A DNA stretch of 64,000 nucleotides from Schmidtea nova (lineage: Eukaryota): assembly GCA_044892505.1 (NCBI GenBank), contig CM097882.1, positions 203,546,001 to 203,610,000 of the forward strand. Direction: 5' to 3'. The translations under genes were made by a program, and so were the position numbers. Each line of letters starts with the position of its first letter. Position 1 is the stretch's first letter. The notes under the pieces were generated by a model. The model had not been told where the DNA came from. It saw only the letters and a list, made by a program, of their open reading frames with translations, and made no database searches. This document shows positions 10,456 through 64,000 of this stretch, in pieces.

Positions 10456-10578
10456 AATTATTTTTATTATTTTTTGATTATTATTTTTACAATTATTATT
10501 TTTATAATTATTCATATTTTATCATTATAATTTTTTAAATATTAATTTTATAATTATAATTTTTATTTTTATTGTTTT

Positions 10579-10689
10579 TGTTATATATATTAAATCAATC
10601 TTTAATTTAAAGTTGTTTTAATAACTAAAATTTTATGTTTAATAAATATTTGAATTTAACTAGTTTCTAGTATTCAGTACTTCATAACA
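10579..10689 (+). repeat. 5' LTR of the Mag-like element
   Basis: Identical by eye over 111 bp to 14409-14519; TG start, CA end. Confidence 0.95.
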
Positions 10690-14400: not shown

Positions 14401-14408
14401 GAAGGAGA

Positions 14409-14519
14409 TGTTATATATATTAAATCAATCTTTAATTTAAAGTTGTTTTAATAACTAAAATTTTATGTTTAATAAATATTTGAATTTAACTAGTTTCTAG
14501 TATTCAGTACTTCATAACA
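14409..14519 (+). repeat. 3' LTR of the Mag-like element
   Basis: Identical by eye to 10579-10689; preceded by the purine-rich GAGAAGGAGA. Confidence 0.95.
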
Positions 14520-14638
14520 GTTTTTAAATTAATACCGTAGATAAAATAATATACATTTATTTTCAAAAAAATTAAATTTACAATCATATAAATACTAAAG
14601 AGTCTTTATGTTATCTTCATTATATTTTTCAATCTTTG

Positions 14639-14831
14639 TTTGGTTTTGATGATAATCTCACTATTTTCAAACAATTCTATTAGTTTTTGCCATTTTCCGT
14701 TTTCTTGAAGCCAGGGGTATATTTCATTTTAGATTATCTAAAATGAATTATACCCTTGGCTTCAAGAAAACAGAAAATGGCAAAAACTAATAGAATTGTT
14801 TGAAAATAGTGAGATTATCATCAAAACCAAA
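14639..14831. repeat. 193-bp near-perfect palindrome
   Basis: 96-bp arms, 3 mismatches, 1-nt loop at 14735. Confidence 0.95.
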
Positions 14832-15939
14832 TATTATACCCGTATTGACGATTGAAAATAGTTTTCATAATCTGAACCTGAATTATCTAATATTTTTTTA
14901 ATATGCATGAATACCACAATGGCATGTGATCACTTCATTTCGAAATAAAATAACAAGTAAAACACGTTTTTGAATGCATATTGCTTGCTTTAAGTTGTCT
15001 TTTGTTTTAAAATTCATGAAAGTTCGATTGATTTTTAATGATATATTTTCTAGGCATCAAGATATCAGGATTTGTAGACTTAATATGATATGATCATCAT
15101 TTCCTTTAGATAACCGGCCATCAAGCAAATTTCTTATAGAAGTTTCTTGTTTTATTTTATTAAAAATCATAAGTTTTTAAATATTTATACAAATTTGTGC
15201 AAAACTTGTGTGTTTATTACTCATATATTGCAATTCATGCACATAAACAACAAAGATATTGCAATATAATTGCAAATTACACAGGTTTTAAAGGTGATTT
15301 GTTAACTCGTACATCTTGAGTCCATCTTTCGACTTATTATTATGTATTATCTATCTACGTCAATCTATCACATGTATTAGTTATCCAATTCATTTTTGTG
15401 TGCATGTGTCAGTAATCGGTTGTATATTGTCATAATCTCCTTGATTTACTGACAATAAGTATTTTTAGCTAACTGGTACTCAAATAGACGCTGAAACTGA
15501 TCATATTTTTGAATCATATCATATACTCTAAAATCAACCTCATATAAATAAATGTACTACTTGTGTTTTAAGTGTGTTGAAAACACAAATCTACTTTTTG
15601 ACTGTAGTTTTTGACAGACAATTATGTATTTCTTATTTTTACTGGCGATTAAAAATCGTAAACTATACATTTATTTAGAAACTAATTATATTTCCCACAT
15701 TTGTGTATATGAAATCATTTATTAATTAAACAGCAATGCCCCCATTGGTACAAAAACTTTTCTTCGATACAATGAAATGGATAATAATTTATATATTCAA
15801 AAATTTTCAATAAGTATTCAAAAGCGCAGGTAAAGAATATTATGAATTGAATGAAATTATGTTTATTAAATAATGATGATATTTACCTTTTTTATTTCAT
15901 TATTACACGTTTACTTATTAAAGGTTTCATAAAATATTA

Positions 15940-25924: not shown

Positions 25925-26131
25925 ATTATCATAATTATCTTTTGATTTCACCTTTGATCTCTTTATTTAAATCAATAATTTTCATATTAATAATTGTATC
26001 ACTTTTATTTTCTTAATACACACTTAATAAAGGATTTGCCGCTATATCGTGTACTTAACAATCAAAAAATGTTTTTGATCTATAGTCATGCAATTATGAA
26101 AATAATTGATATAAATTAAAAGAGATCAAAG
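25925..26131. mobile_element. Foldback MITE family copy (CTTTGATCTC...TCAATAATTTTCATA arms)
   Basis: Imperfect ~35-bp inverted arms; related copies at 10242-10455, 54546-54813, 62187-62454 and a partial copy at 3196-3240. Confidence 0.75.
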
Positions 26132-29848: not shown

Positions 29849-30062
29849 NNNNNNNNNNNNNNNNNNNNNNNNNNNNNNNNNNNNNNNNNNNNNNNNNNNN
29901 NNNNNNNNNNNNNNNNNNNNNNNNNNNNNNNNNNNNNNNNNNNNNNNNNNNNNNNNNNNNNNNNNNNNNNNNNNNNNNNNNNNNNNNNNNNNNNNNNNNN
30001 NNNNNNNNNNNNNNNNNNNNNNNNNNNNNNNNNNNNNNNNNNNNNNNNNNNNNNNNNNNNNN
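29849..30062. other. Assembly gap
   Basis: Run of N. Confidence 1.
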
Positions 30063-30907: not shown

Positions 30908-33689
30908 GGTGCATTTGGGTTATCTTACTCCCAAAAAAAAATATAATTTATTTTTATATTTTGTATGCATAAAAATTATATTTTTATATTAAATTTTTCA
31001 ATAATATTTTACTTGATTACTATCTTTTTTATAGATTCGCCGCAATAGAAAAATGTAATAAAATATATCCTCTATAAAAATACATTTGACTTTTATATAA
31101 AATAATATAATTATACAAATACGATAACCGTTAAACAACAACTAAATATTTTTTAATAAAGTCATATGCCAATAAGTTTTACCAATAGGCCAATATGCAA
31201 CTATGTAGTCGAGAATAGCGTTGAATTTTATTCTACCATTCAAGTTCTGACGCCACATAAACTCGCATAAATACGACTCCAACTTCTGCCTGTGTGTTCC
31301 ATTATGACGTTTGTTTCGTTTCTTGGCGCGACTCCACATGTTCTCGACGTTCTGTGTGTACGTGTAATAGGGTCAACAAAGTTTTAAGTATGCTTGATCG
31401 TTAAGTGAGTGTAATGTTGGCCCCACTGCTGTCTAATACTATTGTACGCACCCCACCTATCGGAAAGTATTTTAGTTCCAGGTCGAATCTGCGCAGTAAT
31501 AATGATCATCAAAGTGTTTGCACTTCTATCCGGAACTGTAAAGAGGGAACATTCCAGAGTCTCTCTACATATGCCACCGAAGACCCACTGTTGTGGAGTC
31601 ACACGCCCAGCATTATTTTTTCGCTTTGTAAATAGACTCTCGTCAATTTCTACATGTAAACCTGGGCCGTCGATTAGCATCTGGTTGAGTTGGCTCAGTA
31701 GCGTAGCTGCGCAAACTTCCCGTAAGTAATTATTCCAGTCGATAACTGTTCAAGCGTTCCTTTGCAATTCATATTCACAAAAACTGATAGATGTCATTTC
31801 ATCCGCCTAACAGTAGATAAATAATTGTTCTAAATGTTAATTTTGATCTCTGCAGCCAAGTGTCACGACGAATTGGGATATCTTCGCGGCAACACTGCGC
31901 TTGTAACACCACCGGTTGTGTTTGTCGGTCAGTTGAAGTAGGCCGTGTCTCTGAAGAAACCGAACACTAGTTTGTTTTTCATCTATTACACTACGGTCTT
32001 AACCCGAAAATAACACCATCGTGTTGTATTTGAGTTTTTAAAAAATTTTGACTTTTTTTAAACATTGAAGAAAAATTCAAATATAACACCACTTTAAATA
32101 TAACACCATGGTTTTTTATTTAATATTTAAACATTAATATAATGATAATTAACCAAGCATATGTCTCCCAAAATACTGATCAATTTCTACCATTACCACA
32201 GTTTGAATTGGATTTGATACTAGATATTCAAATGAAGTTTTAGTATTTGCATTTTTTATTATAATTTTCCTTAATGGACACAGCAAAAATCTCGTTTTCA
32301 GATGCAGGTATGTCATCATTCTGAATGTTTTCAAATTAATTAGAATCTACTAAATCAGATAATTCATGCAGAGACTGCATAAATAAAATTAATTGATTTT
32401 TATACTCCTTCCAAGTATTTTCAGCTTGATTACCATATTTCCTGTGGTGTACACACATGTAAAAGCTTGCAGTATTTGAATCTGGTAAATACCATTCTGG
32501 TGGTTGATATTTTTCTTCATTTATATAATCGTTTTCAGGTGTAACATACTCAGTTGCATATAATTCATTCCAGATAGTAATGTCAAAAGATGGTTGAAAT
32601 AAAGCTTTTAAAGGTGGATGGAGAATATTCATATCAAATATTTCTTTAGGGACCAATCCACATACCTTGAATGCATTAACTACTTTTTCTGGCGTTTTTG
32701 TGCTAATCCATTCAATAATCCAGTTTGAAACCATTTCATAGCTAGGAACTTTAGGGTTTCCAGCTTTTGTTTGCAAGTTTTTATCTTCCAAAGAATCATA
32801 AGAATAATAAGCTGTTTGATAAAAACTTTGTAAACTTCTATTTATAGCAACATCCAAAGGCTGTAAAATACTGGTCAAGTTAGGAGGTACAATTACAATA
32901 TGAATATTATATTTCTCCAATGATTTGGAATTTGCAAGCTTTGTATGAGCACCATAAGAATCAATAATATATAGGATAGGTTCACATAAAAATTATGTCT
33001 CCATACGAGATATTATAGTTTGTCGAGTAAATTGTAGCAGGATTTCATCATTCCACATTCCAGTCTTATTTACATCAACTAAAACACCTTTGTGAATAGT
33101 TGGCTTATTTTTTAAGCCAGAAAATAAAACATGTGGTTAATAAAAATAATATTAAATAAACAAAAAGATTTGTAATAATATAAATACTTATAAAAACTTA
33201 TATTAAGAAAAATTTTAAAAGTACTTAAAATTTAAAATTATAAAAGATATTTTATAAAAAAAGAATATTTAATAATAAAATTTTAAGAAATACTTTTTTT
33301 ATTATTTATTATTTTAATATTAAAAATATATAAAAAAAAAGTTATTACACATAAGTATTTTAAAACACCATGGCGTTATATTTGAATAAAACACCAGAGT
33401 GGTCTTATATTCAAACATAACACCATGGTGTAATTTTCGGGTTAAGACGGTAGGTAATTCTAATAAATTCATGTTTGTTTAGGGGGTAGTTTTTCTTGAG
33501 ATAAATTATTGATGTCATAAATTAATTTTTATTATTGATGACATGATATATGTCAGAAAGTGAACTTTTAAGATGTTAACTGATTTTTTGTTGCTAAATT
33601 GTTGAATGGCCTACTAAATGCATACTTAATGCATACTAAATATAAAAATAAATTATATTTTTGGGGGAATAAGATAATCCAAAAGCACC
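30908..33689 (-). mobile_element. Second Merlin element (pseudogenised), interrupted by a pogo insertion
   Basis: ~60-bp imperfect TIRs starting GGTGC; degenerate 8-bp TSD AATATGTG/AAAAAGTG; ORF starts MNLLELP at ~33473 and resumes SVIDEK left of the pogo; VEIDES, QWVFGG, SDRWGAY, HTQNVENMWS motifs. Confidence 0.88.
31994..33450 (-). mobile_element. pogo-family (DD35D) element nested in the Merlin; N-terminal part lost
   Basis: 18-bp TIR C(G/C)GTCTTAACCCGAAAAT; TA TSD; repeated subterminal AACACCATGG motifs; IIDSYGAH-35-QPLD. Confidence 0.9.
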
Positions 33690-39179: not shown

Positions 39180-40616
39180 ATGACAGCAGAGCTTCAGTTT
39201 TCCGTGGAAGGTTTAGNNNNNNNNNNNNNNNNNNNNNNNNNNNNNNNNNNNNNNNNNNNNNNNNNNNNNNNNNNNNNNNNNNNNNNNNNNNNNNNNNNNN
39301 NNNNNNNNNNNNNNNNNNNNNNNNNNNNNNNNNNNNNNNNNNNNNNNNNNNNNNNNNNNNNNNNNNNNNNNNNNNNNNNNNNNNNNNNNNNNNNNNNNNN
39401 NNNNNNNNNNNNNNNNNNNNNNNNNNNNNNNNNNNNNNNNNNNNNNNNNNNNNNNNNNNNNNNNNNNNNNNNNNNNNNNNNNNNNNNNNNNNNNNNNNNN
39501 NNNNNNNNNNNNNNNNNNNNNNNNNNNNNNNNNNNNNNNNNNNNNNNNNNNNNNNNNNNNNNNNNNNNNNNNNNNNNNNNNNNNNNNNNNNNNNNNNNNN
39601 NNNNNNNNNNNNNNNNNNNNNNNNNNNNNNNNNNNNNNNNNNNNNNNNNNNNNNNNNNNNNNNNNNNNNNNNNNNNNNNNNNNNNNNNNNNNNNNNNNNN
39701 NNNNNNNNNNNNNNNNNNNNNNNNNNNNNNNNNNNNNNNNNNNNNNNNNNNNNNNNNNNNNNNNNNNNNNNNNNNNNNNNNNNNNNNNNNNNNNNNNNNN
39801 NNNNNNNNNNNNNNNNNNNNNNNNNNNNTAATAAAGGCTAAGAAAACTACATGATGCCCCCGAAATGACTATTAATTCACAACTTACAAGTGATGCTCAG
39901 AATTGGGCAAATCAAATGGCAGAAACAAATAAACTTCAACACAGCAAACCTGAAGGTAAATATGGAGAGAATATAGCCTCATCTTCCAAAAGACTTAATG
40001 GTAATTTTACTTTTATTTAATTTATTGTATATGTGTATATCAATTCAGTAAAATAAATTTTTAATAATCTTTTAGGTCAGGAAGTAACTTTGATGTGGTA
40101 TAGGGAAATTTTCGATTACGATTTCAACGAAGAGAAACAAAATTTAGCAAAAACTGGTAAATTATTCTTCAAAATTAGACATAAAAATTAAAAACTTTTC
40201 AAGGTCATTTTTCTCAAGTGATTTGGAAGACCAGTTTAGAAATTGGATTTGGGTTAGAAAAATCCACTAATGGAATGTGGTATTACTGCGCACGTTATTT
40301 GCCGCCAGGCAATTGTGTTGGAAAACATTTGGAAAATATTTACAATTACGGAAAAGGTATCGGAATTTATTCTAATAAAAATGAACAATTCTCGTTAGAT
40401 TGGATAGAGCATCCTCTCATTATAAAAATATCACAACATAGACATCCGTCTGTAGGAAGTCAAAAAAGTGAAGAGAAAAATGAAATGAAATTGGTCAGTA
40501 CATCTAAGAGAACTAGCATCATAAATGGAATAGAAACGACTGAATTGGTTGAAACTTTTACGAATGAAGATGGAACGAAAAGTATCAAAAAAGTCATTGT
40601 TGAAAAGGTACAGTGA
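39180..40616 (+). CDS. CAP/SCP-domain protein, GAPR-1 (GLIPR2)-like; exons 39180-gap, ~39837-40000, 40076-40156, 40204-40616
   Basis: Spliced translation LRKLH...LQHS...YGENIA...WYREI...GHFSQVIWK...ARYLPPGN keeps the His/Glu tetrad; GT-AG introns 40001-40075 (75 nt) and 40157-40203 (47 nt) preserve the frame; MTAELQFSVEGL before the gap fits the first helix; the link across the gap is inferred. Confidence 0.9.
39217..39828. other. Assembly gap inside the CAP gene
   Basis: Run of N. Confidence 1.
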
Positions 40617-42185: not shown

Positions 42186-42344
42186 TGTGCTAAGTTAAGA
42201 TCAGTAATTTATTTACACCCCTTTATTTAATCACATCATACGTTAATGTAGTTGCCGAAACAACCGCAACGTAATATATTTAGCAAATAATAATTGCAAA
42301 ATCGTAGGACCAAACACTATTATGTCACGATATTTTCTCGCACA
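42186..42344 (-). repeat. 3' LTR of the minus-strand Gypsy
   Basis: About 96% identical to 45806-45964; adjacent to the PPT. Confidence 0.93.
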
Positions 42345-45300
42345 TTCCCCCGTGATCAGTATGATGCATCCAAATCATACTGATCAAGATAAAGCGGCTT
42401 CCTCCGTGGTCGTCTCGGCCTGTCCTCATGCGTTGTAACTTCCATCTCCTCCTCACTTGCTCGGGCTGTCTCTGATTTTTCGTCAGCAATATCTTCTTCC
42501 ACTACTGGCCGGATGTCTGCAATGTGACGCGGTATTCCATCCACTTCAATCTTTGTGCCGGAATTAATTCCAGTTACAATTCCAATGGGCCATTGAGTAG
42601 TACACTTTGCTTGTCCCGGCTTCACAACAACCCTTTGTCCAGGTGTATATTCACATGATACTGAGCGTTCATCTTCTTTCCTCGGTAAAATCTCCAGTGA
42701 TACTTGAACAACCCTTCTGATGGGGCTGTTTCCTGATTAGTTCCATCTCTAGGCGCGGAATTGTACCAGAAGACGATATCTCGGGGATCTGTATGACTCC
42801 TGGCTGCATGACACTTTATTGTTCGGTGATTTCTTTCTACGATCCCATTTCCAGCCGGCCGATAAGCGCATCTATATCTCGGTTTAACATTCCATCTACA
42901 ACAAAGCTCTCTCAAAGAATTAGATTGAAAACTTGCCCCATTATCCATCAGTATTTCCAATACTAGGCCTCTCTCCCGAAATATTTCCTCCAGATTTCTC
43001 ACAATGTTTGGGACGTCCTCACGATCTATTTTCCTCCAGATTGCAAATCTGATGGGCCCACAGTCCACCATGGTCAGAAATGTGGATCCCTAGTGATGCG
43101 TGACGTCAACCGCCAATCTCTTCTAGTTTTCCGTGACTTCCAGTGTGCCTTGCTCCCATTTAATCGGTGATGGGTCGATTGACCTACATTCTGTACAGTT
43201 TCTCAAGACTTCTTTTATACAGTCTCGACTGGTCTACTGATTTTCAGATTGAATGAAGTAGATTGATTTTTCTAAGCCGAAATGGTGTTTCGATGGCGGG
43301 CCTTTATTTGCTCAATTGAGAGTCCCACACATCCAAAATGTTTCCAAGGCTTCAGCCATTTTTCTGGAACACGCGTGAGGACATCTGCTCGGTTCTCTGC
43401 TGACTTCACTAAACATACAGAGATAGTTATACTTTCGTCGGCGGTGAGTTCTTTGACGATCCCCAGGCGGCGTCTAACGAGCGTTTTAAAAATTCCATGG
43501 ACCCGTATTCTGCTTTCATTATTCAGAACTGTTTTAGCCAACTTACTACCCTTGCTGAATCCACCATCAACTCGATTCTCTAAACTCCCCATTGTATTGC
43601 CAAGTTAATACCCTTGAGTACCGCATCTAGTTCCGCAACATTTATATGAGAGTGGTCATCACCTTTTCTGAGCCACGAAGCATCCTCAACGACGTCATTA
43701 TTTATTACCAGCATAACCCCTAAGGCGAGACTACTCGCATCACACCACAGAACCCCACACTCACTTTTACTTATCGTCCACTTTCCCTTGACTGGATCGC
43801 TTGATTTTACACGAGTAATCACTTCTGACAGCTTCGATTCGCATTCTTTTCTAATTAAATCATCCCATTTCGTGCCCTTTGCAATTCTTTTAATATAACT
43901 GCACGCTACTCTGAGCCACCCTGCAACTTGATAATGTCCAACAAGCTTACCGCATATAGAGAACAGCATCCGACGAGTGATTTCACTTTCGATTGCGCCG
44001 ACATCATTTCACCTGATCCATGACAGGTGACCCTGTCGGTCACGTTTTATTCTGAGCCCAAGAACCTTTGCGTTTTCAATTGATTCTGCTGGCTTTGTAG
44101 TCAAGCCGAATTGAGCTAAATGATTGACGACCTCATTAACTTGAACTTTACTTGTATTAACAGCGATATCATCAATGTAGTGATCTGTCGCATCTTTAAT
44201 TCTGGGGTGGAGGCTTAACACTTTTCTGAGCACTTGAGACATTATTTTTGGAGCACAGTTGAGGCCGAATCCCAATCTTGTTAAATAGTACAGTCTGTCT
44301 TTGTATCGAACTTTTTGGTATTCCCAAAGATCCTCGCTGATATGTAACTGCAAATAGGCATTCTTTAAATCAAGCATAACCACATGATCTCCCATTTGAC
44401 GCCATTTCTTCAAACTTTCGCCACATACATCGCTGTCACCGGTGTGACATTCAACGAAATTATTGAGCTCTCTGAAGTCAAGAAACAGTCGGACTTTCCT
44501 TTTGTTTTCTTGCACTGCTGCTAACAAGGGCAAGATACCATGATCTATGCCATTCGCTGGAATCAACCAGTCTTCTTTGATCCAACGCTCGATCTCCTTT
44601 TCGTACTCCTGTCGAATTTCTGGTTTTATTGCATACTCTGAGACATGGTTTTTCAGCAGGGCAGGTTTGTCCTTCCACTTCCAGGATACGGTCCATTTGT
44701 TCCCATCGAATGACACTGAAAAATCATCATCTTCAATTTTCACTTGATTCTCAATTGATGAAACTGCACATCCACCAAATCGCACTCCTTCTTTATTGAT
44801 CCAAACGCCTCCAAGAAGTCCGATTGCATCAAGTCCCAGAACAACGTCCACCCCCGCTACAAGGTTTTTCATAATCAAACAATTTACTGTAACGCAAGAT
44901 CCGCATACGGATATTCTGCATTGGCTCTCTCCTTCGCAATGCACTCTTCGACCATCTACAGAGATGACATCCTTGGTTTCGCCTCTACCTCTCGCAAGCC
45001 TGCTTGACGCTATTGTTTGGGAACATCCAGAATCGATCAATCCAATGCACCACTTGCCGTTCACCTTGAGCTTTATTATCACCTGCGCCATTCTCGACGT
45101 TATTGAGAAACCGCTGGAGCTACAGTTTCTCTTCTGGCGTTTCCTTGCGATCTTTTTTAACATTGTCTGGATGAGTGCCCTGTGTTCCCGCATGTCCAAC
45201 ATTCTAGCATAGGACATTTGTTCTTGTAATGTCCAGGTCTCCCACACCCGTAACAGAGCGTACTTTCTATTTTAACATTGTTGGGCGATGACTTCGACGC

Positions 45301-45805
45301 GACCAGACCCGCCGGCTCGGAATGTTCTGACAACAGAGCGCGAGCTTGACGTACTATTTTTGTAAGGCTCATTTCCTGAATTTTTGCCGAGGCTCTCATC
45401 TGTTGGGACACTGGCGATAGCAAACCTGTAACAAATGCTCTTTTGAGCAAATTATCTGATTCAATTCCAGTCAGTGTAGCCAATTGCTTTAAATCCGCGA
45501 GAAAAACGTCCATCGGCTCCCCGTTCTATGACCGGGTTCGAAATTCATCGTAGGCCTTGAAACCGTCCATTGAAAAGTTGTCCAGTAACGCCCTTTCCAA
45601 TGTGTTGCAGCATCGCTTGTCTTTTTCTGCCAAAGGATCATAGACCAAAAAAGCTGGTAACTCTAATAACAATGGTAGCACGAGCGAAACATCTTCTATT
45701 TTTAGATGAGTTGCCACCAATTTGAATTTTTTGAGCCAAGACGAGAATTCACCTATCCCGTCATAGGGCTTTATCAACTTTATTATTTCCATTGCCGCGA
45801 AAGCT

Positions 45806-45964
45806 TGTGCTAAGTTAAGATCAGTAATTTATTTGCACCACTTTATTTAATGACAGCATACGTTAATGTAGTTGCCGAAACAACCGCAACGTAATATATT
45901 CAGCAAATAATAATTGCATAATCGTAGGACCAAACACTATTATGTCACGATATTTTCTCGCACA
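45806..45964 (-). repeat. 5' LTR of the minus-strand Gypsy
   Basis: About 96% identical (153/159) to 42186-42344. Confidence 0.93.
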
Positions 45965-46353: not shown

Positions 46354-46561
46354 NNNNNNNNNNNNNNNNNNNNNNNNNNNNNNNNNNNNNNNNNNNNNNN
46401 NNNNNNNNNNNNNNNNNNNNNNNNNNNNNNNNNNNNNNNNNNNNNNNNNNNNNNNNNNNNNNNNNNNNNNNNNNNNNNNNNNNNNNNNNNNNNNNNNNNN
46501 NNNNNNNNNNNNNNNNNNNNNNNNNNNNNNNNNNNNNNNNNNNNNNNNNNNNNNNNNNNNN
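46354..46561. other. Assembly gap
   Basis: Run of N. Confidence 1.
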
Positions 46562-53720: not shown

Positions 53721-54545
53721 GGACATCTAAATATACACAGGTAATTTAATTGCTGAATAAAAATTATAATGACTTACCTTTTTCAGTATTTCATAAATAT
53801 CTAAAAAATATATTTATAAAATAAATAGATATTTAACTTAAAATATTAAATAAAATATGTAATTGAATTAAAATATGTTAAAACAGATTTAAAATATGAT
53901 TTAAAAATCATAATAAATAGTTATTACTCACCAACTGCCCGTATTAAATGTCTTTGTAGCCCTTAATTATAGACAATTGGTGTAGCATAAATGTTCAAAA
54001 TTCTAAGCTCAGATTTAACCAATATTAATGAAAAGCGTGACATTTACACATTACAGCAACTATACTATTATATTAATATTTCGTTTTCAATATAACATTA
54101 ATCATTTTTACTTTTAGAAATAAAGATGCAATTCAATTTCGAAGAACTTGTTAAATTGAACGTATTGTATGGTTATCCTCTATCATTATGGTTAAATGAT
54201 TTTAGTAAAAAAAACTGATATTTGATATTTTTATTTTTTTAATAACAATTGCCTGCTAATTCGTTTTTGTTTGATTAAATTAGTTATTAAAATATCAAAA
54301 TACCAAACTAATTGTTTTGCTTTAGAAAGCCGAGACAAATCAATCATACCCATTCATTTTTATGTAATTGACTGGTTCATTTCAAATAGCTACTGTTCAT
54401 TTCTTGTGAGAACAAGCCAATTAAAACAAAAAAAAATAATTATATTGGATATGCTGTTTAGATAAGTACTTTTGATAATTTATCAATGACGATGATTTTT
54501 AACTTAAATATTTTGATTATTCATATTTCTAAAAAGAAAAATAGT

Positions 54546-54813
54546 TTTTATATCAATAATTTTCAAAATTGTATGATTATAAATAAAAAAGTCTTTTTGG
54601 GTTTTATGGTTCTTAAGTACAACATATTTTGGCACAACCTTTATCAAGTGTGTATTTCTTTGATAACACAATTGATAAAAACTGCCGATATATCGTGTAC
54701 TTAACAACCAAAAAACGCAAAAAAACATTTTAATCTATAGTCATAAAATTATGAAAATTATTGATATAAATAAAGAGAGATCAAAGGTGAAACCAAAAGA
54801 TAATTATGATAAT
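54546..54813. mobile_element. Foldback MITE family copy (duplicated at 62187-62454)
   Basis: Shares GCCGATATATCGTGTACTTAAC and ATGAAAATTATTGATATAAAT...GAGATCAAAG with the other copies. Confidence 0.7.
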
Positions 54814-55275
54814 AGTTTTTTGTTTTTGAAAATCATTTAAATATTGAGTTGACCAGTAAATAATGTCGAAGATTTAGGTAAGATATACAAACAAGAATAC
54901 AAATCTGAATTGTTTTAATCGACAAAAAACACCTATTAAATAAACTTTAAGAAATATGACTCTAAACGCATTGAAAACAAATATTTTTAACAGTTTTATT
55001 CAATACAAATGTGGATCTGAGAAATAATCTGAATTAAGCAGTGGATCTAGATTGCTAAATTAACTTTTTGTATGTTCTAAAAACGAGTCACATCCCTTAA
55101 AATTCAACATATGCTAAACTCTCATTTTTCCAATACAATTTCTTTTGTCATTTACCTTTTTATATTTTGTCATTTTACTTTTTTATTGTTTTCTATAATA
55201 AAATACCAATGGAATTAAAAAAAATTGTTCTGTTTATTAACTGCATGGTTTTCTTCTCATTGGTGTACATTCTTT

Positions 55276-55306
55276 CAATCCCAGGATCCTGGGATTGCAA
55301 ACACTA
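55276..55306. repeat. 22-bp perfect palindrome CAATCCCAGGATCCTGGGATTG plus a probable hAT-type terminus (copy at 62917-62947)
   Basis: Perfect palindrome 55276-55297; the reverse strand reads TAGTGTTTGCAATCCC..., resembling hAT ends. Confidence 0.55.
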
Positions 55307-56164
55307 ACTTTGACTGACTGGTTGAAACTAAATAATTGGTGATTTTGTGTACCAATTCGACATTTCGGTACTGTAAACATTTTATTGATATTAAAACAAC
55401 CAAAATATGACTGATGTTTGATGTCAGTAAACCTTCAGTATTTCTTCTTTCATTGATTCTTTGCTACCCAACCGACTTTTACAATTTGAACTTGAAAAGA
55501 TCCATTCTTTTTATACATTGCCGTTACTTTCATCCTTGATTTTTCAGATAACTGAATCTAATTTCCTGGAAAAGAGTAGATAATCCGAAGAATAATTAGA
55601 CGCATCCAAGAGATTGTCATTAGCCATTGTCATTAATAATGTATCTAATTTGATATTTTTAAATTCCAAGAAAAAACTTTCGATATCTCCAGCAACAATA
55701 TTTATTTCGCTATTGATTTATTCAATATTGAGATAAATCCAAAAATAATGGATTAAAAAATGATATTAAAATATAATATAAGAAAGTCAAAATAATTAAG
55801 AAAATATCAATTAAATATACAAAATATTACCTTAAATTGGCAAGCCTTCAATTAAAATTAAAAAAGATTTAACTGTGAAAAGATAATAAAAACATGTCTA
55901 ATTTATTATTAAATATGAACAAAAATGTATAATGTTGAAGAAAACTAAGTAAGTGTTGAAAAATAATGAAATTCTGTAAGAATAACACTAGTAAATTATA
56001 TATGAAATTCGTACGCCATGTTTCCAAGTTACAGATTACCTGTAAGACTATGCATTTTCGAGTGATGTCATATCCAGTGTACCACGAATAATATTTAACA
56101 AATATTTCATGTATTTTATGTGTTAATATGGGTGATTTTAAGATATATTTTAGAGAATAAATAT

Positions 56165-56232
56165 GTATGTTTAGTAAAAACCCACATGTTTAGTGAAACA
56201 CATATATCTAGTGAAAACACACCTGTTTAGTA
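56165..56232 (+). repeat. ~20-bp minisatellite (GTTTAGTGAAAACACAT-like), duplicated at ~63806-63873
   Basis: Seen directly. Confidence 0.6.
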
Positions 56233-56657
56233 TATTTTATGATGATTTTAGTAAATAATATGGTTAGTGGTTATTTGAATACCAGTTAGCTAAAACTTAC
56301 TTTTCAGAATAAATCAATACGGTTTATATGTATAACTAATTACTAACACACAGGTTGTATAATAAAGAATGTGATTGATTGACATTTGTTTTCCCAAAAG
56401 TTTAGTATTATATAGATAATACACGTAGTTAAAGATTGAAAATGGTGGGTTTCAAATGTATGTGTTTATAAATAGACTGTATGACATGTAGTTGCATGAC
56501 TTATAGTTGTATTATAATTTCTTTATTATCCATGCGCATGAGCCGTAATAAAGTTGCAATACTTGTTCAATCAAATTGCAATACATGAGTTATACAAAAA
56601 CCTGCAGATCTTGGATAAATTTGTATAAATACTTGAAAATATATGATTATTTAGAAA

Positions 56658-57049
56658 ATGAAACAAGAAAAATTTATAATAAATTTGATTGACGGTCTTT
56701 TATCAAAAGAGAAAGATTATGATGAACTAATATCAAGTTTACAAATCCTGGTGTCCGATGCCGAAAAAATATTTCATTCCAATCCCATTTGAATCAAAAA
56801 TCAGTTAGAAGCAAGAAACATGCATTCAAAAGCGTGTTTTACTCGTTATTTGAGTGTGAAATGAATTGGTTACATGTCATTATGGCGTTCAATAATATAA
56901 AACAAATAATGGAAAATTCTGGTTCAAATTATGAAAATTATTTTCAATGGTCAGTACAGGTATATTATTATTTTTATATAATTATAATGTTAATATTATT
57001 TTAGATTATCCAAAGTGAAATATGTCCCTGGGTTCATGAAAATGGATAA
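56658..57049 (+). pseudogene. Divergent Bcl-2-fold gene or pseudogene (one frameshift, 45-nt intron, truncated BH2)
   Basis: MKQEKFIINLIDGLL (BH4-like), SLQILVSDAEKIF (BH3-like), -1 frameshift at ~56786, FKSVFYSLFECEMNWLHVIMAF (BH1-like), phase-0 GT-AG intron 56960-57004, IIQSEICPWVHENG* (BH2-like). Confidence 0.55.
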
Positions 57050-57479
57050 ATGAAAATGGATAGTTTTACAATAAAATCTATATTAATCTGTTAAAACCTT
57101 TAAATAATCAGTATCAAACAATAATACATTTATTTTCGATAAATTAAATTTACAATATCCATTTTTTCTGAAATAAATGTTAAAAAATGAATTAAAAACA
57201 ATCATGTTAAAAACAATGATGTTAAATTGGATATTTTAAAATATAAATGAAAAATAACTGGTATATATACTAATTATTTACACACACATTTATTTGTTAA
57301 TAAGATATTGTATGAAACTTTTGCAAATAAAAACCATCACAAAGGATGTTCTGTTACCAAGGTTCTGCTATTAGGGTTCTGTTAGAAATTTTCTAATACT
57401 AGAGTTCAACTACTGTGTTATTCATCACAATTCAAGTCTGAATTGTTGATATAAATCACTGTGATGCTTATTACGATTG

Positions 57480-57610
57480 TGTCATTTATGTGTAGTGCAC
57501 TTGTATTGAATATGTCGTGTATTGCTTATGTCATACACTTGTATTGCAAGTGTCATACCCTCGTATTGTAAATTTCATGTATTTTTATTGCTTGTATCAT
57601 ACAATTTTGG
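57480..57610 (+). repeat. ~22-bp minisatellite (TGTCATACACTTGTATTGCAAG-like, 4-5 degenerate units)
   Basis: Seen directly. Confidence 0.65.
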
Positions 57611-57879
57611 TATTCAAGAACATGTATATTTTCTATGATTTCCCTTGAATATTAATCAATTTTACAGAGTTTAATTATTTCAGAGTAAATTTAATACAAA
57701 CTAGTAAAAATATTGACAATTTCTGTATTTATTAATCAATGATTTTGGGAACTTCATGACTATACAAAATTGGTTAAAAGATTGTAAAATGGTATAATGA
57801 TTGTAAAATGGGTTAAATAACTGCAAATAGCAAAACTATGGTCATTATTTCCCTTGTATACTCAATTGTAGTAAGTTTA

Positions 57880-58336
57880 TCGAAATTTTTACAAGTGTAA
57901 AAATCATTAATTTTCAACTAAATACTCATTGGTTTTGTCATAATCAAACTTTAAGTCTTAGAGTCAATTTCTATAATGTGCAAAACAATCACAAAGTTGG
58001 TGTTCTCATCACAAAGTGAGTTTTCATATCAAAAGAATGGATCTGAATAAAACTTTAAAAGTTGAAATACCACAACGTAAAATATTCATAGAATACCCCA
58101 GCGTAATAACAATTGTGATTTATTTTTAAACGATTAACACGATCAATAAGAAATTATCTTGCAATGAAACAATATTTATCAACAACAGGAACACTGAATT
58201 TCATGATGCATTTCAATCAATTGAATTTATGGGTAATGAAAATTGGTTTATTGATATATCCATTCAAGGATATAAAATCGATCCAAAAGATTCAAGGTCT
58301 CCAATTTGGAAAATAAAAAGTGCTAGAATTGCATAG
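57880..58336 (+). pseudogene. Decayed ORF, tentatively a viral-type OB-fold ssDNA-binding protein
   Basis: Three frameshifted segments: ...NTHWF..., KTLKVEIPQR, and WFIDISIQGYKIDPKDSRSPIWKIKSARIA*. Confidence 0.3.
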
Positions 58337-59686
58337 ATAAAATCGCATAAATAACATTGATGTCGTAGATGTCGCATATATGTGTATTTATTGATAAATG
58401 TTGATAAATTCTCACTTGTTGTTTTTTGAATAATTGTTTTGTAAAATATTTTGTTTTTTGAAAAATTTTAAGTTTTTATGTTTTTGACCTCGTGGTGACC
58501 TAGGCCTCAATGTGTTCTTAAAATGGCCTTAAAATTTAACCTTAAAGCGACCTTAAAGCGACCTTAATTTGACCTTAAAAATTAAAAATGTTTGATGACT
58601 CGTCGTGTTTGTGCAAATAAAATTTGGGGATGAGTTACAAAAAAGTCTCCCCTGGGGGTCGCTTTATTTTGATTGGATGCACACATGAGATGACGTCTTA
58701 TGTCTTTGTTCTCCCGTCCACACTTACTTCTACTGACATCTTCCTCTAGCCTCTTTTGGATCCGTTGAGCCTTTGCCAATTCGGCTTGATGGTCGGGTTG
58801 TTTAGTGATACTGTAGAAAATAATAATATAAACGTTTTTAAAATGCACATTAATTTTCAGTCTCATAATAAATTCTATAAAAACGTCGAGTCAAAACTAT
58901 AATAAAATTCTTCACATCTTGTAAGGAATTTTTAGCAACTCAGATGTTATCAAATTAACACTAATTTTATTTGAAATCAACACATGGATTAATCAAAAAC
59001 TGGATTATTGTCTTTGGCAAACACATGCCGGATTCTTAGACTTTCTAGAAGGGATTTGTCTCGCAATGCGGAAATCGAAAATTTCGGCGACTTTCTCTCC
59101 TGTGAACTTGAGATCAGCCGCTTTTTACCCTTTTTTATTAATTTTTAAATATTATGTCATTTTAATTCAGAGCTTGTCTTATTTTTAACCTTTTTTCATT
59201 AAGTTTTAAAAATAATTGTAATGTTCTGTGGACACACCAATCTATCAAATAGTGTTTTGGAGTTTTTATTATTATGTTGATGTATCTCTTGTTTCCTTGT
59301 ATATTCTACACACCATAACAACTCTCGTTGGTAACGTTTGGATATATATTTTTAACTGTATATGTTTATTTGTGTCTGTTCGAATTAATAATTACCAATT
59401 GTGTTTTCTGTTCGCTGATGATAATATTACATAATTTGATTAGAGATGTGATTATCATTGAATGCTTTGTCTTATTTATATTTAATGTTATGTAATTAAT
59501 TAAAGTTATGTGAATTAATGTTATAAAAAAAATGTTAAAAATCTTGTAATCCTAAATATTTTATGAAGTGTTTAAAAGAAGTTGTTAAGCGGTTAACCCG
59601 CGCAATAATTAATAAACAAATAAAACATATTAGTTACAGCTGTTGTGTTTTTTAAAATGTTCAATTGCAAAATTATTTGTCGAATT

Positions 59687-60445
59687 ATGTCTACAGATTA
59701 TTCTAATTTATCAAATAGCAAATTCATAAAGGAAAATAAACTCCCATATCTTTTACCGAATTTTGATGAGAATGAAGAGTACGCTGACGATCTGTTAGCT
59801 GAAATTAAAAGAAATTTCATTTATTTAACTAAAGACAAGCAATTTTATGAAAATTTCAAGCTCAATTTAAAATTGCTTCAAAGGTATATAAATAATTATA
59901 GTCTCCGATTTACACTAGCAGACTATATAGCAATTATGAAGCTCCTATATGGGGTGCTTATTCAAAAAGATATCGATGTGATAATTACGATAAATGTTAT
60001 AACCGAATTAAAAATGCTTCTCAAAAAAACGAACTTTCTATCACGTGACGGTTTAACAATTGACTGGAATTCTTTGTATGATATTTGGTATCATTTTACC
60101 CATAGTTCTGTCGTTCACAATGGAATTATATTTACGCCAGAGCCGATAAAAGTCATTTCTGCAGAAATAATTCGATTATTTCCCAAGTTTTTTTTTGATA
60201 ACTCAACTATTATTCTATTATCCCTATCCCGTTGAGCTCGACAAACTCAATGGATTAAAAATCCTAAAAGTCTTTCTACCATCTTATTACAATAATCACA
60301 AGTCGTTCTTTGAATTGATTCGGCCACATTTGATAGGAATGCTGGAAGTGCCGACATGGATGAGCAACTGTGAACATGATTTGATGATTTTATTAGGCCG
60401 AGTTGCTACGACTTATGTCGGTTTGATGGATTGGACTCCTTTAAT
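59687..60445 (+). pseudogene. PSME4: Intronless N-terminal fragment of proteasome activator PA200/Blm10, frameshifted at ~60215
   Basis: NKLPY, LAEIK.N, RYI..Y..RF...DY....KLLY, LLKK..FLSRD.L.I.W..LYD, then KVFLP and LLGRVATTYVGLMDWTP follow the PSME4 N-terminus as I recall it, in order. Confidence 0.85.
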
Positions 60446-61010
60446 TAATAACCCAATGCTTTTGATACTTGGTGATCGTAGTTTGAAAAGCCTCACAAAT
60501 AATACTAATAAGCCCGACACGATAATTTTAAACTGTAATCCTGACGTATTTGCTTATTATACCTATTCTATGAACGATGTGACAGATGTATCACAATTAA
60601 AAATCGTCGTTACTGATATTAAAAAAATAACATTAAACATACGGTCTTATTCAAATTATAGAACTATGAATGAACTAGGATCATACAACTATATCAACGC
60701 AACCCAATTTATTGGACAAGAATTTTCTAATAAGAAAGCCTTCAGTGGAACACTCCCTTATGAGATCCATCTTGGGGGATTACCCGATGATTCCGATCGA
60801 CCTTTGGTTTGGCCTGGAATTCTTCTTACATTTCTATTTGGCATGAATGAGTGTATGGTAACAAATTTCTGTAAATTGAATACAGCCTATAAATATTCCG
60901 AAACAAAAGTACTATTAAATTTATTTATACGATTATATAAAATTAAAAGCGAGGAAATAAAACTAAAATTGATGAATCGGCAACTGCACCAAAATAATGT
61001 CATTCTTTAG
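60446..61010 (+). other. In-frame non-PSME4 extension with LamG/LNS-like motifs
   Basis: EIHLGGLPDDSDRPLVWPGILLTFLFGMNEC resembles the LGGLP...VW..LL...GC end of neurexin-type LNS domains. Confidence 0.4.
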
Positions 61011-61084
61011 TCTTTGTAAAATTCTACTCGTTTTTTACTATTTAAATTTAACCACGTGTTTTTTACCTTTTTTCTTAAATTTTT

Positions 61085-61800
61085 ATTTAAAATTTCAATT
61101 CAAAATTACAAATCTGAGAGTAGAAAATCCAGTTTAAAAAGATTTCAAAATATTTTACTTGTTTAAAAGATTTTCACGTGCTTTTATTTACCATTAAAAT
61201 TTATATTTCAGTTCAAAAATACCAGAGCTCTTTTCTTGCTCTAGAAAAATCTGAGAAGTGAAAATCCTATTCAAAATTCCCTAACCAAAAATTCAATACA
61301 AATTATCGGAGTCCGTTTCTGCCTTAGAAAAATATAGGAAGAGAACAAAATATACAAAAATACCAGACCAAAAGATCGAATTCAAAAATACCAGACCAAA
61401 ATTCCCCATACAAAAAACCTATCGTCCCATTTCGCCAGAGAAAAGGTCTTGGAGTTTAAAATACTGTTTAAAGTATCAGTGCCAAAATTCCCTGTAGAAA
61501 AGACCAAACCAAAAATCCCTGTTCAAAATACTAAGACCAAAATTCCAATACAATTTATCAGAGTACTTTTTTGCACGAGAATTATATGAGAGTAAAAAAT
61601 CCATGTTTAAAAATACCTGACCGAAATTCCCTATAGAAAATATTGAGACCAAATAATCGTATTCAAAAATCGTACAAAAAACCCAGAGTCCCTTTTTTAC
61701 CGGAGTTGAAAATCCTGTAGAAAATTTCCAGACCATGAATTTTCTGTCTAACTCACGTTCAAAAGATCGAACAAAAGTTCACTATACAAAAAATACCAGC
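61085..61800 (+). repeat. Degenerate minisatellite array (core ~AAAATTCCCTATACAAAAATACCAGACC)
   Basis: Recurring AAAATACCAGACC and AAAATTCC motifs, with longer recurring blocks. Confidence 0.8.
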
Positions 61801-62101
61801 TCAAAATGTTGTGGCCCGCTAATTCGCTTTTTCTAAGGGGAGATGGGGGTTGAGTTAGAGCGCCACTACCTACCTACTGACAATCAAAATATTACAACTC
61901 AATTCAAATGAAAATTTCAATAAAAATAAAGAAAAATTAGTAAATAAATATAATTAATAACAAATGAGGTTTCATATAATATTCAACAGGCATGACAATT
62001 CACAGCCTTTAAAAGATTTTCTGACATTTCATTCTTCGATAATAAATCGGTTAATTTCAGCTCTGAGGATCCTTGAATTCCAAAAATCTTTGAGTTGCAA
62101 T

Positions 62102-64000
62102 GATAAGTACTTTTGATAATTTATCAATGACGATGATTTTTAACTTAAATATTTTGATTATTCATATTTCTAAAAAGAAAAATAGTTTTTATATCAATAA
62201 TTTTCAAAATTGTATGATTATAAATAAAAAAGTCTTTTTGGGTTTTATGGTTCTTAAGTACAACATATTTTGGCACAACCTTTATCAAGTGTGTATTTCT
62301 TTGATAACACAATTGATAAAAACTGCCGATATATCGTGTACTTAACAACCAAAAAACGCAAAAAAACATTTTAATCTATAGTCATAAAATTATGAAAATT
62401 ATTGATATAAATAAAGAGAGATCAAAGGTGAAACCAAAAGATAATTATGATAATAGTTTTTTGTTTTTGAAAATCATTTAAATATTGAGTTGACCAGTAA
62501 ATAATGTCGAAGATTTAGGTAAGATATACAAACAAGAATACAAATCTGAATTGTTTTAATCGACAAAAAACACCTATTAAATAAACTTTAAGAAATATGA
62601 CTCTAAACGCATTGAAAACAAATATTTTTAACAGTTTTATTCAATACAAATGTGGATCTGAGAAATAATCTGAATTAAGCAGTGGATCTAGATTGCTAAA
62701 TTAACTTTTTGTATGTTCTAAAAACGAGTCACATCCCTTAAAATTCAACATATGCTAAACTCTCATTTTTCCAATACAATTTCTTTTGTCATTTACCTTT
62801 TTATATTTTGTCATTTTACTTTTTTATTGTTTTCTATAATAAAATACCAATGGAATTAAAAAAAATTGTTCTGTTTATTAACTGCATGGTTTTCTTCTCA
62901 TTGGTGTACATTCTTTCAATCCCAGGATCCTGGGATTGCAAACACTAACTTTGACTGACTGGTTGAAACTAAATAATTGGTGATTTTGTGTACCAATTCG
63001 ACATTTCGGTACTGTAAACATTTTATTGATATTAAAACAACCAAAATATGACTGATGTTTGATGTCAGTAAACCTTCAGTATTTCTTCTTTCATTGATTC
63101 TTTGCTACCCAACCGACTTTTACAATTTGAACTTGAAAAGATCCATTCTTTTTATACATTGCCGTTACTTTCATCCTTGATTTTTCAGATAACTGAATCT
63201 AATTTCCTGGAAAAGAGTAGATAATCCGAAGAATAATTAGACGCATCCAAGAGATTGTCATTAGCCATTGTCATTAATAATGTATCTAATTTGATATTTT
63301 TAAATTCCAAGAAAAAACTTTCGATATCTCCAGCAACAATATTTATTTCGCTATTGATTTATTCAATATTGAGATAAATCCAAAAATAATGGATTAAAAA
63401 ATGATATTAAAATATAATATAAGAAAGTCAAAATAATTAAGAAAATATCAATTAAATATACAAAATATTACCTTAAATTGGCAAGCCTTCAATTAAAATT
63501 AAAAAAGATTTAACTGTGAAAAGATAATAAAAACATGTCTAATTTATTATTAAATATGAACAAAAATGTATAATGTTGAAGAAAACTAAGTAAGTGTTGA
63601 AAAATAATGAAATTCTGTAAGAATAACACTAGTAAATTATATATGAAATTCGTACGCCATGTTTCCAAGTTACAGATTACCTGTAAGACTATGCATTTTC
63701 GAGTGATGTCATATCCAGTGTACCACGAATAATATTTAACAAATATTTCATGTATTTTATGTGTTAATATGGGTGATTTTAAGATATATTTTAGAGAATA
63801 AATATGTATGTTTAGTAAAAACCCACATGTTTAGTGAAACACATATATCTAGTGAAAACACACCTGTTTAGTATATTTTATGATGATTTTAGTAAATAAT
63901 ATGGTTAGTGGTTATTTGAATACCAGTTAGCTAAAACTTACTTTTCAGAATAAATCAATACGGTTTATATGTATAACTAATTACTAACACACAGGTTGTA
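62102..64000 (+). repeat. Copy 2 of the direct duplication (runs off the window end)
   Basis: Same as 54461-56359. Confidence 0.95.

What the first reader, a model, noticed from the sequence alone, without database searches (positions are those of the whole stretch)
56658..57049. Hidden, highly divergent Bcl-2-family gene missed by the ORF track
Seen: joining ORF 56658-56786 across one missing base (CCC run) and splicing a 45-nt phase-0 GT-AG intron gives MKQEKFIINLIDGLLSKEKDYDELISSLQILVSDAEKIFHSNP(H)LNQKSVRSKKHAFKSVFYSLFECEMNWLHVIMAFNNIKQIMENSGSNYENYFQWSVQ|IIQSEICPWVHENG*. Known: the Bcl-2 fold has BH4-BH3(L..x.D)-BH1(ELF...NWGR)-BH2(W...NGGW) in this order and with similar spacing. Inference: a Bcl-2 relative in which NWGR became NWLH and that lacks the final GW and TM anchor. 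The stop coincides with a 13-nt duplication (ATGAAAATGGATA x2). If the organism is a reduced parasite, a decaying apoptosis regulator would bear on loss of that pathway.
Basis: partly seen in the sequence, partly recalled or inferred. Interest (0 to 1): 0.7.

Follow-up and report, generated by a model that had tools for sequence, protein, structure and literature searches.

The report
Decayed Bcl-2-family gene copy

Summary
The sequence features are as described: ORF 56658-56792, a second frame open to 56959, a 45-nt phase-0 GT-AG intron (56960-57004), a 14-codon exon ending in TAA (57047-57049), and a 14-nt-period tandem duplication (57036-57062).

- A more decayed paralogue lies on the minus strand (about 15155-14606). 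Its second exon matches only Bcl-xL/Bcl-2 BH2 in the PDB (E=0.002).
- Three intact relatives on metagenome contigs have an unbroken first exon. Pfam Bcl-2 is the best (L001) or only (L002, L003) family hit, below threshold. They share the phase-0 intron site, then a canonical BH2 (WIEDNGGW); L002 also shows a hydrophobic tail.
- The relatives are under purifying selection (dN/dS 0.13-0.15).
- The two focal pieces align to them (hhalign E=1e-10 and 2e-5).

One correction: the frame break is a 16-nt deletion between 56787 and 56788, not one missing base. The focal copy also stops inside BH2 and has no recognisable tail.

Verdict: an unprocessed, probably recently disabled pseudogene of a lineage-specific Bcl-2-like subfamily that lacks the usual BH2-splitting intron.

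Not done or not resolved: the organism is unidentified, the rest of the genome could not be searched, and the joined model was not searched or folded.

The parts
56624..56631 (+). TATAAATA box 27-34 nt upstream of the ATG; likely core promoter of the compact gene
   Evidence: The same octamer lies at the same distance upstream in the paralogue (15189-15182) and in the intact relative L001 (373-380, ATG at 409). Its function is inferred.
56658..56787 (+). Exon 1, 5' part (frame A, 43 codons): N-terminal helix and BH3-like region of the Bcl-2-like gene
   Evidence: hhalign to the intact-relative profile A3, columns 1-39: 76.5% probability, E=2.2e-5. tblastn to the paralogue: 61% identity, E=4e-6.
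56787..56788 (+). Site of a 16-nt deletion that shifts the reading frame (disabling lesion 1)
   Evidence: The paralogue has 16 extra nt here (alignment A1). Intact relatives have 6 residues (profile columns 40-45) between the ends of the two focal pieces.
56789..56959 (+). Exon 1, 3' part (frame B, 57 codons): BH1 region (EMNWLH where relatives have DMKWTR) and the following helices
   Evidence: hhalign to A3 columns 46-100: 97% probability, E=1.2e-10. tblastn from L001/L002 exon 1: E=1e-11. Whole-library phmmer hit P0002: E=4.9e-4.
56960..57004 (+). 45-nt GT-AG intron, phase 0
   Evidence: An intron in the same position and phase is present in the paralogue (14839-14738), in L002 (314-351, 38 nt) and in L003 (320-363, 44 nt).
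57005..57049 (+). Remnant of exon 2: first half of BH2 (PWVHENG) then a premature TAA (disabling lesion 2). The rest of BH2 and the tail anchor are not recognisable downstream.
   Evidence: tblastn from L002/L003 exon 2 aligns only residues 1-14 here. Relatives continue GGWD... and L002 ends in a hydrophobic tail. Downstream identity to the paralogue is about 50%.
57036..57062 (+). 14-nt-period tandem duplication overlapping the stop codon
   Evidence: TRF: period 14, 1.9 copies, 100% match. Ten other short arrays lie within the same 2 kb, so this is ordinary slippage in AT-rich DNA.
14606..15155 (-). More heavily decayed paralogue of the same gene: exon 1 at 15155-14840, intron at 14839-14738, exon 2 at 14737-14606
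   Evidence: the repeat finder pair I1. 75-78% DNA identity across upstream region, coding sequence and intron. ATG is ATA at the homologous start, there is one +1 frameshift and seven in-frame stops. Its exon 2 carries PWLQENGKW and hits only Bcl-xL/Bcl-2 in the PDB.
14639..14831 (.). Near-perfect palindrome: an inverted copy of the paralogue's exon 2 fills its intron
   Evidence: the repeat finder pair I2: 96-nt arms, 97% complementary, 1-nt spacer. tblastn finds exon 2 on both strands.
54461..62101 (+). 7,641-nt unit that contains the focal locus. Its first 1,899 nt recur at 100% identity at 62102-64000, up to the window end.
   Evidence: This implies a further copy of the focal locus just beyond the window, or an assembly artefact.

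Best explanation
The locus is an unprocessed (DNA-duplicated) pseudogene of a compact two-exon gene. That gene encoded a small (about 160 aa), tail-anchored, multi-BH-motif Bcl-2-family protein.

Shown: homology to intact relatives; the shared intron; a 16-nt frameshifting deletion in exon 1; and a premature stop in the middle of BH2, with no recognisable remainder of BH2 or membrane anchor.

Inferred:
- The ancestral gene worked like other Bcl-2-fold proteins, anchored in the mitochondrial outer membrane by its C-terminal helix and regulating membrane permeabilisation or cell survival.
- The focal copy no longer makes such a protein. At most it yields a 44-aa N-terminal peptide from a transcript that may still be made, because the TATA box and ATG are intact.
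- It was disabled fairly recently, because no substitution has yet created a stop in its 114 codons.
For: 1. An in-window paralogue is 75-78% identical over the upstream region, coding sequence and intron.
2. The paralogue's exon 2 hits Bcl-xL/Bcl-2 BH2 in the PDB: best E=0.0019, 94 hits, all 60 listed are Bcl-xL or Bcl-2.
3. A whole-library search with the frame-B piece finds P0002. A word search from P0002 finds P0004 and P0005.
4. Their contigs L001-L003 show an unbroken exon 1. L002 and L003, which extend far enough, also show the same phase-0 intron site and a canonical BH2; L002 additionally shows the hydrophobic tail.
5. Pfam PF00452 is the best (L001) or only (L002, L003) family hit for each intact exon 1: E=8e-4, 3.8e-3 and 1.3e-2, covering profile positions about 6-69 of 100.
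6. The exon-1 profile puts A1/Bfl-1, two invertebrate Bcl-2 chains and Bak among its top PDB hits. The exon-2 profile hits Bcl-xL BH2 at E=5e-6.
7. The focal pieces align to profile columns 1-39 and 46-100. The missing 6 residues match the 16-nt gap.
8. Intact relatives have dN/dS of 0.13-0.15. Focal versus paralogue gives 0.69 on the largest block, with substitutions spread 22:21:33 over the three codon positions.
Against: - The focal pieces themselves give no Bcl-2 hit in Pfam or the PDB at E<=10, so the family call rests on transitive homology.
- Pfam scores for the relatives are below the gathering threshold, because they were searched exon by exon.
- The AlphaFold model of exon 1 alone was of low confidence (pLDDT 55.6) and Foldseek found nothing meaningful.
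- The focal copy has no substitution-made stop in 114 codons: P about 0.09 if half the divergence fell on it neutrally. Some residual constraint or function is therefore not excluded.
- Assembly quality near here is questionable (a 100%-identical tandem repeat and a palindrome in the paralogue), so lesions could in principle be artefacts.
Confidence: 0.85

Rival explanations
1. The gene is intact in the organism, and the lesions are sequencing or assembly errors.
For: Frames A and B and the first 14 codons of exon 2 contain no stop. The neighbourhood shows assembly-like oddities: a 100%-identical 7.6-kb-period repeat running off the window and a 97% palindrome in the paralogue.
Against: The break is a 16-nt gap, not a homopolymer slip. 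Downstream of ENG there is no recognisable coding sequence for the rest of BH2 or the anchor in any frame. An error model therefore needs several independent, non-trivial errors within 300 nt.
Confidence: 0.05
2. The copy is still functional in altered form. It could be a truncated, anchor-less Bcl-2-like protein made by an extra splice that skips the frameshift, or a short N-terminal peptide with regulatory activity.
For: The TATA box and ATG are retained. Seven GT-AG excisions of 56-110 nt would restore the frame. The absence of substitution-made stops could reflect continuing constraint.
Against: Every frame-restoring excision removes at least 19 codons of exon 1, part of which falls in the region that matches the Bcl-2 profile. 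Each has a weak donor and has no counterpart in the relatives, whose exon 1 is uninterrupted. The BH1 Arg is already His, and BH2 stops before the GGW that relatives conserve. Coding identity to the paralogue equals that of the intron and upstream region.
Confidence: 0.07
3. The resemblance to Bcl-2 is a chance match in AT-rich DNA, and the ORFs are not derived from a Bcl-2-family gene.
For: There is no direct Pfam or PDB hit for the focal pieces. The word search found nothing.
Against: Two independent segments reach the family through homologues. The BH1 region does so via three intact relatives under purifying selection. The BH2 region does so via the paralogue and the relatives. The intron position and phase are shared.
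Confidence: 0.02

Closest known systems
Bcl-xL / Bcl-2 (BCL2L1, BCL2), pro-survival multi-BH proteins
   Same: The BH2 of the family is close to theirs: relatives read PWIEDNGGWD and the paralogue PWLQENGKW, against Bcl-xL PWIQENGGWD. The exon-2 profile hits Bcl-xL at E=5e-6. L002 has a C-terminal hydrophobic tail after a charged linker.
   Different: The protein is much shorter (about 160 aa) with no long loop. BH1 is KWTR in the relatives and NWLH in the focal copy, instead of NWGR. The gene lacks the BH2-splitting intron after the Trp codon and has a phase-0 intron 16 codons upstream instead (PMC7527217). The focal copy is broken.
A1/Bfl-1 (BCL2A1)
   Same: It is the best PDB match for exon 1 of the intact relatives, covering the helices up to and just past BH1, and it is a similarly small protein. 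From my own knowledge, not checked here: mouse A1 exists as several tandem copies, one of which carries a frameshift. That is the same pattern of a duplicated small Bcl-2 gene with a dead member.
   Different: E-values are only about 0.08-0.16 and identity is low. No orthology is implied.
Invertebrate Bcl-2 proteins (PDB 3qbr 'SJCHGC06286 protein', 7jmt 'BCL-2 protein') and Bak
   Same: They are among the top exon-1 profile hits (E 0.28-0.9). Multi-member Bcl-2 families are reported in flatworms, rotifers, cnidarians and others (PMC8998228).
   Different: The matches are weak. The subfamily (pro-survival or Bak-like) cannot be assigned from these data.

Membership tests
Bcl-2 family (Pfam PF00452) | Significant match to the family profile | tested here: inconclusive
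   Focal pieces: no hit at E<=10. Intact relatives, exon 1 only: PF00452 is the best or only hit but below the gathering score (16.5-20.4 bits against 31.4). The full-length spliced model was not searched. Membership rests on transitive homology.
Bcl-2 family (Pfam PF00452) | BH1 motif (NWGR) at the right position | tested here: inconclusive
   The position is right. Relatives have KWTR, keeping Trp and Arg, and it aligns to A1 and Bak NWGR. The focal copy has NWLH and the paralogue K*SH, so Arg was already His before the two window copies split.
Bcl-2 family (Pfam PF00452) | BH2 motif (W..(D/E)NGGW) | tested here: not met
   The focal copy reads PWVHENG and then stops. The motif is met in relatives L002 and L003 (WIEDNGGW, WIEANGGW) and nearly met in the paralogue (WLQENGKW).
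Bcl-2 family (Pfam PF00452) | C-terminal hydrophobic tail anchor | tested here: not met
   It is not recognisable downstream of the focal stop. It is present in L002 (..LATGVVLLYMSTVG, at the contig end) and as a remnant after a stop in the paralogue (..RLFSIYM).
Bcl-2 family (Pfam PF00452) | Helical-bundle Bcl-2 fold | tested here: inconclusive
   AlphaFold2 on exon 1 of L001 with a 3-row alignment gives an all-helical model but pLDDT 55.6 and pTM 0.35. Foldseek against the PDB gives no hit better than E=2. The full-length model was not folded.
Bcl-2 family (Pfam PF00452) | Conserved BH2-splitting intron directly after the Trp TGG codon (stated to be in almost all animal bcl-2 homologues, PMC7527217) | tested here: not met
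   In L002 and L003 the DNA is contiguous and coding across both BH2 Trp codons. The only intron lies 16 codons upstream of the GGW Trp, in phase 0, and is shared with both window copies.
Unprocessed (duplicated) pseudogene | Retains intron and upstream region, and carries disabling lesions relative to intact homologues | tested here: met
   The intron and about 250-380 nt of upstream sequence are shared with the paralogue. There is a 16-nt frameshifting deletion and a premature stop in BH2.
Processed pseudogene (retrocopy) | Intron-less, poly(A) tract, no promoter | tested here: not met
   The intron is present at the conserved site and the TATA box is retained.

The most novel reading that the evidence does not exclude
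The window comes from an animal lineage that is losing, or is thought to have lost, Bcl-2-regulated apoptosis. On this reading all copies of this lineage-specific subfamily in the genome are dead, so these loci are relics that catch the loss in progress. A milder version is better supported: the intact relatives define a previously undescribed Bcl-2-like subfamily that has given up the near-universal BH2-splitting intron and the NWGR glycine.
Probability: 0.12. Interest if true: 0.6.

Novelty: new member of a known kind. Interest (0 to 1): 0.33.

Why it matters
Taken alone, a dead duplicate of a Bcl-2-family gene in transposon-rich DNA is ordinary. Two things give it modest value.

First, standard family scans miss both window copies, and the intact relatives only reach sub-threshold scores. 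This small subfamily is therefore easy to overlook when counting apoptosis genes in a genome, and such counts underlie claims that a lineage has lost the pathway (PMC8998228).

Second, the subfamily departs from the gene structure said to be shared by almost all animal bcl-2 homologues (PMC7527217). That is a useful marker for tracing its origin.

If no intact copy survives in this genome, the loci would document loss of the pathway in progress.

Tried and rejected
- **Direct scans of the focal pieces.** Pfam and PDB gave only chance-level hits: Cas2 at E=0.07, CmeC at 0.11 and a glycosyltransferase at 0.27.
- **Word search with the frame-B piece.** No candidates.
- **Exact-product look-ups** for a window transposase ORF and for ORF B. 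Neither is on record, so the window's genome does not appear to be in that collection.
- **Two other hits of the whole-library search.** Both are spurious. P0001 is a 1,977-aa leucine-rich-repeat protein whose score is summed over repeats, and BLASTP finds no alignment. P0003 is a 668-aa repeat-rich protein with a signal-peptide-like N-terminus; I read it as unrelated from its sequence, without a family scan.
- **JGI metagenome scan with the exon-1 profile.** 256 pattern matches, none confirmed.
- **Structure route.** The exon-1-only AlphaFold model was too poor for Foldseek.
- **Organism identification via the gypsy-type pol ORF.** The best hits are unlabelled metagenome contigs at 53% identity. 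The best named hit is Macrostomum lignano at 48% over half the query. That is not enough to name the organism.
- **A single-base repair at the C-run.** Rejected in favour of a 16-nt deletion.
- **An extra intron that rescues the frame.** Mechanically possible in seven ways, none credible.
- **Remnants of the tail anchor downstream of the focal stop.** Not upheld. The only blastn match there (57113-57156) is in inverted orientation and lies in a self-complementary AT-rich stretch, so I make no claim.
- **Bacterial promoter/terminator scan.** Uninformative for a eukaryotic locus.
- **Rfam.** No family in the window.

Full report
**Observation**

The window is AT-rich (about 28% GC) eukaryotic DNA dense with transposons. 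I did not take it for human.
- ORF A at 56658-56792.
- A second frame that reads through to 56959 (open from 56726).
- A 45-nt GT-AG interval, 56960-57004, in phase 0.
- A 14-codon exon, 57005-57046, followed by TAA.
- A 14-nt-period tandem duplication at 57036-57062.

With the local base composition, 114 stop-free codons would occur by chance with a probability of about 2e-5.

**Direct tests fail**

Searched piece by piece, the focal sequence gives no Bcl-2 hit in Pfam or in the PDB even at E<=10. The word search with the frame-B piece finds no candidate.

**A paralogue in the window**

A repeat scan found an inverted copy of the start of the locus at 15090-15215 (pair I1). Alignment shows a full second copy on the minus strand. 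It is 75-78% identical through about 250 nt of upstream sequence, exon 1, the intron and the start of exon 2. A further upstream block matches at 56272-56317.

This copy is badly decayed:
- ATG is ATA at the homologous start, although an in-frame ATG lies five codons upstream.
- It has one +1 frameshift.
- It has five in-frame stops in exon 1 and two in exon 2.

Its exon 2 still reads PWLQENGKW followed by a helix and a hydrophobic stretch. That 40-aa piece matches only Bcl-xL and Bcl-2, at their BH2, in the PDB: 94 hits, best E=0.0019, and all 60 listed are Bcl-xL or Bcl-2.

**Intact relatives**

The family scans and the word search had left the protein open, so I used the one whole-library search on the 57-aa frame-B piece. 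Of three hits, two are spurious: a leucine-rich-repeat giant, and a repeat-rich protein with a signal-peptide-like N-terminus that I judged unrelated from its sequence.

The third, P0002 (104 aa, E=4.9e-4, 33% identity over all 57 residues), is a real homologue. A word search from it found P0004 and P0005. All three sit on short, low-coverage contigs of ENA metagenome assemblies (L001-L003).

Their DNA shows:
- An uninterrupted exon 1 of 99-101 codons.
- A second exon reading IIKSKF(S/T)PWIE(D/A)NGGW, then a charged linker. In L002 a hydrophobic tail follows, up to the contig end.

L001 ends before exon 2. The relatives are under purifying selection, with dN/dS of 0.13-0.15 in exon 1 and 0.35 in exon 2.

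**Family assignment**

- Pfam Bcl-2 (PF00452) is the best (L001) or only (L002, L003) family hit for each intact exon 1: E=8e-4, 3.8e-3 and 1.3e-2. The hits cover profile positions about 6-69 of 100 and are below the gathering score, as expected when the BH2 third is on another exon.
- A profile of the three exon-1 sequences has ten Bcl-2-family chains among its 14 PDB hits: A1/Bfl-1, two chains labelled as invertebrate Bcl-2, and Bak.
- A profile of exon 2 hits Bcl-xL BH2 at E=5e-6, with 99 hits.
- The focal frame-B piece aligns to exon-1 profile columns 46-100 (hhalign 97%, E=1.2e-10). The frame-A piece aligns to columns 1-39 (76.5%, E=2.2e-5). tblastn from the relatives gives E=1e-11 at the focal locus.

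Two independent parts of the protein therefore lead to the same family, and the gene structure is shared. I regard the Bcl-2-family origin as established by transitive homology, although no profile threshold was formally passed.

**What is broken**

Between the two focal pieces the relatives have six residues (columns 40-45). At the same place the paralogue has 16 nt that the focal copy lacks. With them, frame A runs into frame B. The lesion is therefore a 16-nt deletion between 56787 and 56788, not a base lost from the C-run.

The second lesion is in BH2. After ENG the focal copy has TAA, where relatives have G-W. Both units of the 14-nt duplication end in an in-frame stop, so the duplication is not the cause. 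Nothing downstream aligns to the rest of exon 2.

In BH1, both window copies have His where relatives keep Arg. That change predates their split.

**Selection**

Focal and paralogue differ almost evenly over the three codon positions (22:21:33). They are as similar in the coding sequence as in the intron and upstream region. dN/dS on the largest ungapped block is 0.69.

The focal copy has no substitution-made stop. About 2.4 would be expected if half the differences fell on it neutrally (P about 0.09). I infer that it was disabled comparatively recently.

Seven GT-AG excisions could restore the frame. Each removes at least 19 codons of exon 1, has a weak donor and has no counterpart in the relatives.

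**Context**

- The focal locus lies about 2.6 kb upstream of the N-terminal coding part of a proteasome activator PA200/PSME4 homologue (59645-60232; PDB 6rey E=2.2e-9).
- Both lie in a 7,641-nt unit whose first 1,899 nt recur at 100% identity from 62102 to the window end. A further copy of the locus probably lies just beyond the window, or the assembly has a false duplication.
- The paralogue is followed within about 20 nt by a gypsy-type LTR element with identical 111-nt LTRs.
- The paralogue's intron is filled by an inverted copy of its own exon 2 (pair I2).

**Mechanism**

Inferred from the family: the ancestral gene made a small tail-anchored Bcl-2-fold protein that acts at the mitochondrial outer membrane. 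Whether it was pro-survival or Bak-like cannot be decided, because BH2 is closest to Bcl-xL while exon 1 is closest to A1 and Bak.

The focal copy can encode at most a 44-aa N-terminal peptide. I take it to be non-functional (confidence 0.85).

**Comparison with the known**

The subfamily differs from textbook members in three ways:
- Its small size.
- KWTR in place of NWGR.
- Its gene structure. The BH2-splitting intron, located directly after a Trp TGG codon, is described as present in almost all animal bcl-2 homologues (PMC7527217). It is absent here. A phase-0 intron lies 16 codons upstream of the GGW Trp instead.

Reviews list lineages with expanded families and lineages that have lost the family altogether (PMC8998228). 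I could not place the window's organism in either group.

**Left out and unresolved**

- The N runs (29849-30062, 39217-39828, 46354-46561) were not touched.
- The exon-1-only AlphaFold model was poor (pLDDT 55.6) and Foldseek gave nothing meaningful.
- The JGI metagenome scan found no further relatives.
- The organism was not identified.

**Verdict**

The Bcl-2 interpretation is right in its core but wrong on the nature of the frame break, and it is untested on the parasite idea. The object is a recently disabled, unprocessed pseudogene of a divergent, lineage-specific Bcl-2-like subfamily. It is a new member of a known kind, of modest interest.

Noticed in passing
window 59645-61010 (+): ORF 59645-60232 is the N-terminus of a proteasome activator PA200/PSME4 homologue (PDB 6rey_c E=2.2e-9, residues 36-189). 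An overlapping ORF in another frame (60195-61010) may continue it. Pfam finds nothing for either. The gene appears to be cut at 62101 by the duplication junction.
   Followed up: partly
window 54461-56359 and 62102-64000: A 100%-identical direct repeat with a period of 7,641 nt runs to the end of the window. It is either a very recent tandem duplication or an assembly artefact. It implies another copy of the focal locus beyond the window.
   Followed up: partly
window 54547-54770 (also 62188-62411; related copies at 25925-26131, 10214-10471, 3149-3252 and 7961-8055): A MITE-like, self-inverted AT-rich repeat family. One member sits at the left edge of the 7.6-kb duplicated unit.
   Followed up: no
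window 14639-14831: A 96-nt-arm palindrome (97% complementary, 1-nt spacer): an inverted copy of the paralogue's exon 2 occupies its intron. It is a fold-back duplication or a chimeric-read artefact.
   Followed up: partly
window 10579-14519 (+): A Ty3/gypsy-type LTR retrotransposon with identical 111-nt LTRs and gag, protease and pol ORFs. It is inserted about 20 nt downstream of the paralogue. The best protein relatives are only 53% identical and come from unlabelled metagenome contigs.
   Followed up: partly
window 42186-45964 (-): A second LTR element (159-nt LTRs, 96% identical) with RT- and integrase-like ORFs in the GC-richest part of the window (41-42% GC). Its superfamily was not tested.
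   Followed up: no
window 26249-27160 (+), 32336-32920 (-), 24817-25278 (+), 28030-28476 (-): DNA-transposon ORFs. An ISXO2-like transposase domain (PF12762, E=1e-11) and a DDE_1 endonuclease (PF03184, E=2e-6) were confirmed. The two mariner-like fragments were recognised by eye only.
   Followed up: partly
window 56553-56585 and 15270-15215 (-): A TTGCAAT(A) motif is repeated two or three times 70-110 nt upstream of the ATG in both window copies, in addition to the shared TATAAATA box. It may be a transcription-factor site of the ancestral promoter. This was not tested.
   Followed up: no
window 40218-40616 (+), next to the N run 39217-39828: This ORF resembles, by eye, the C-terminal part of a CAP/GAPR-1-type domain (..YYCARYLPPGN..). 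Pfam gave no hit at E<=0.01. Its upstream part would lie in the masked stretch, which was left untouched.
   Followed up: no
L001 1-303 (-): The neighbour of the intact relative on its contig is a 101-aa ORF with a hydrophobic, signal-peptide-like N-terminus and no family assignment (Fib_alpha, E=0.065 only).
   Followed up: no
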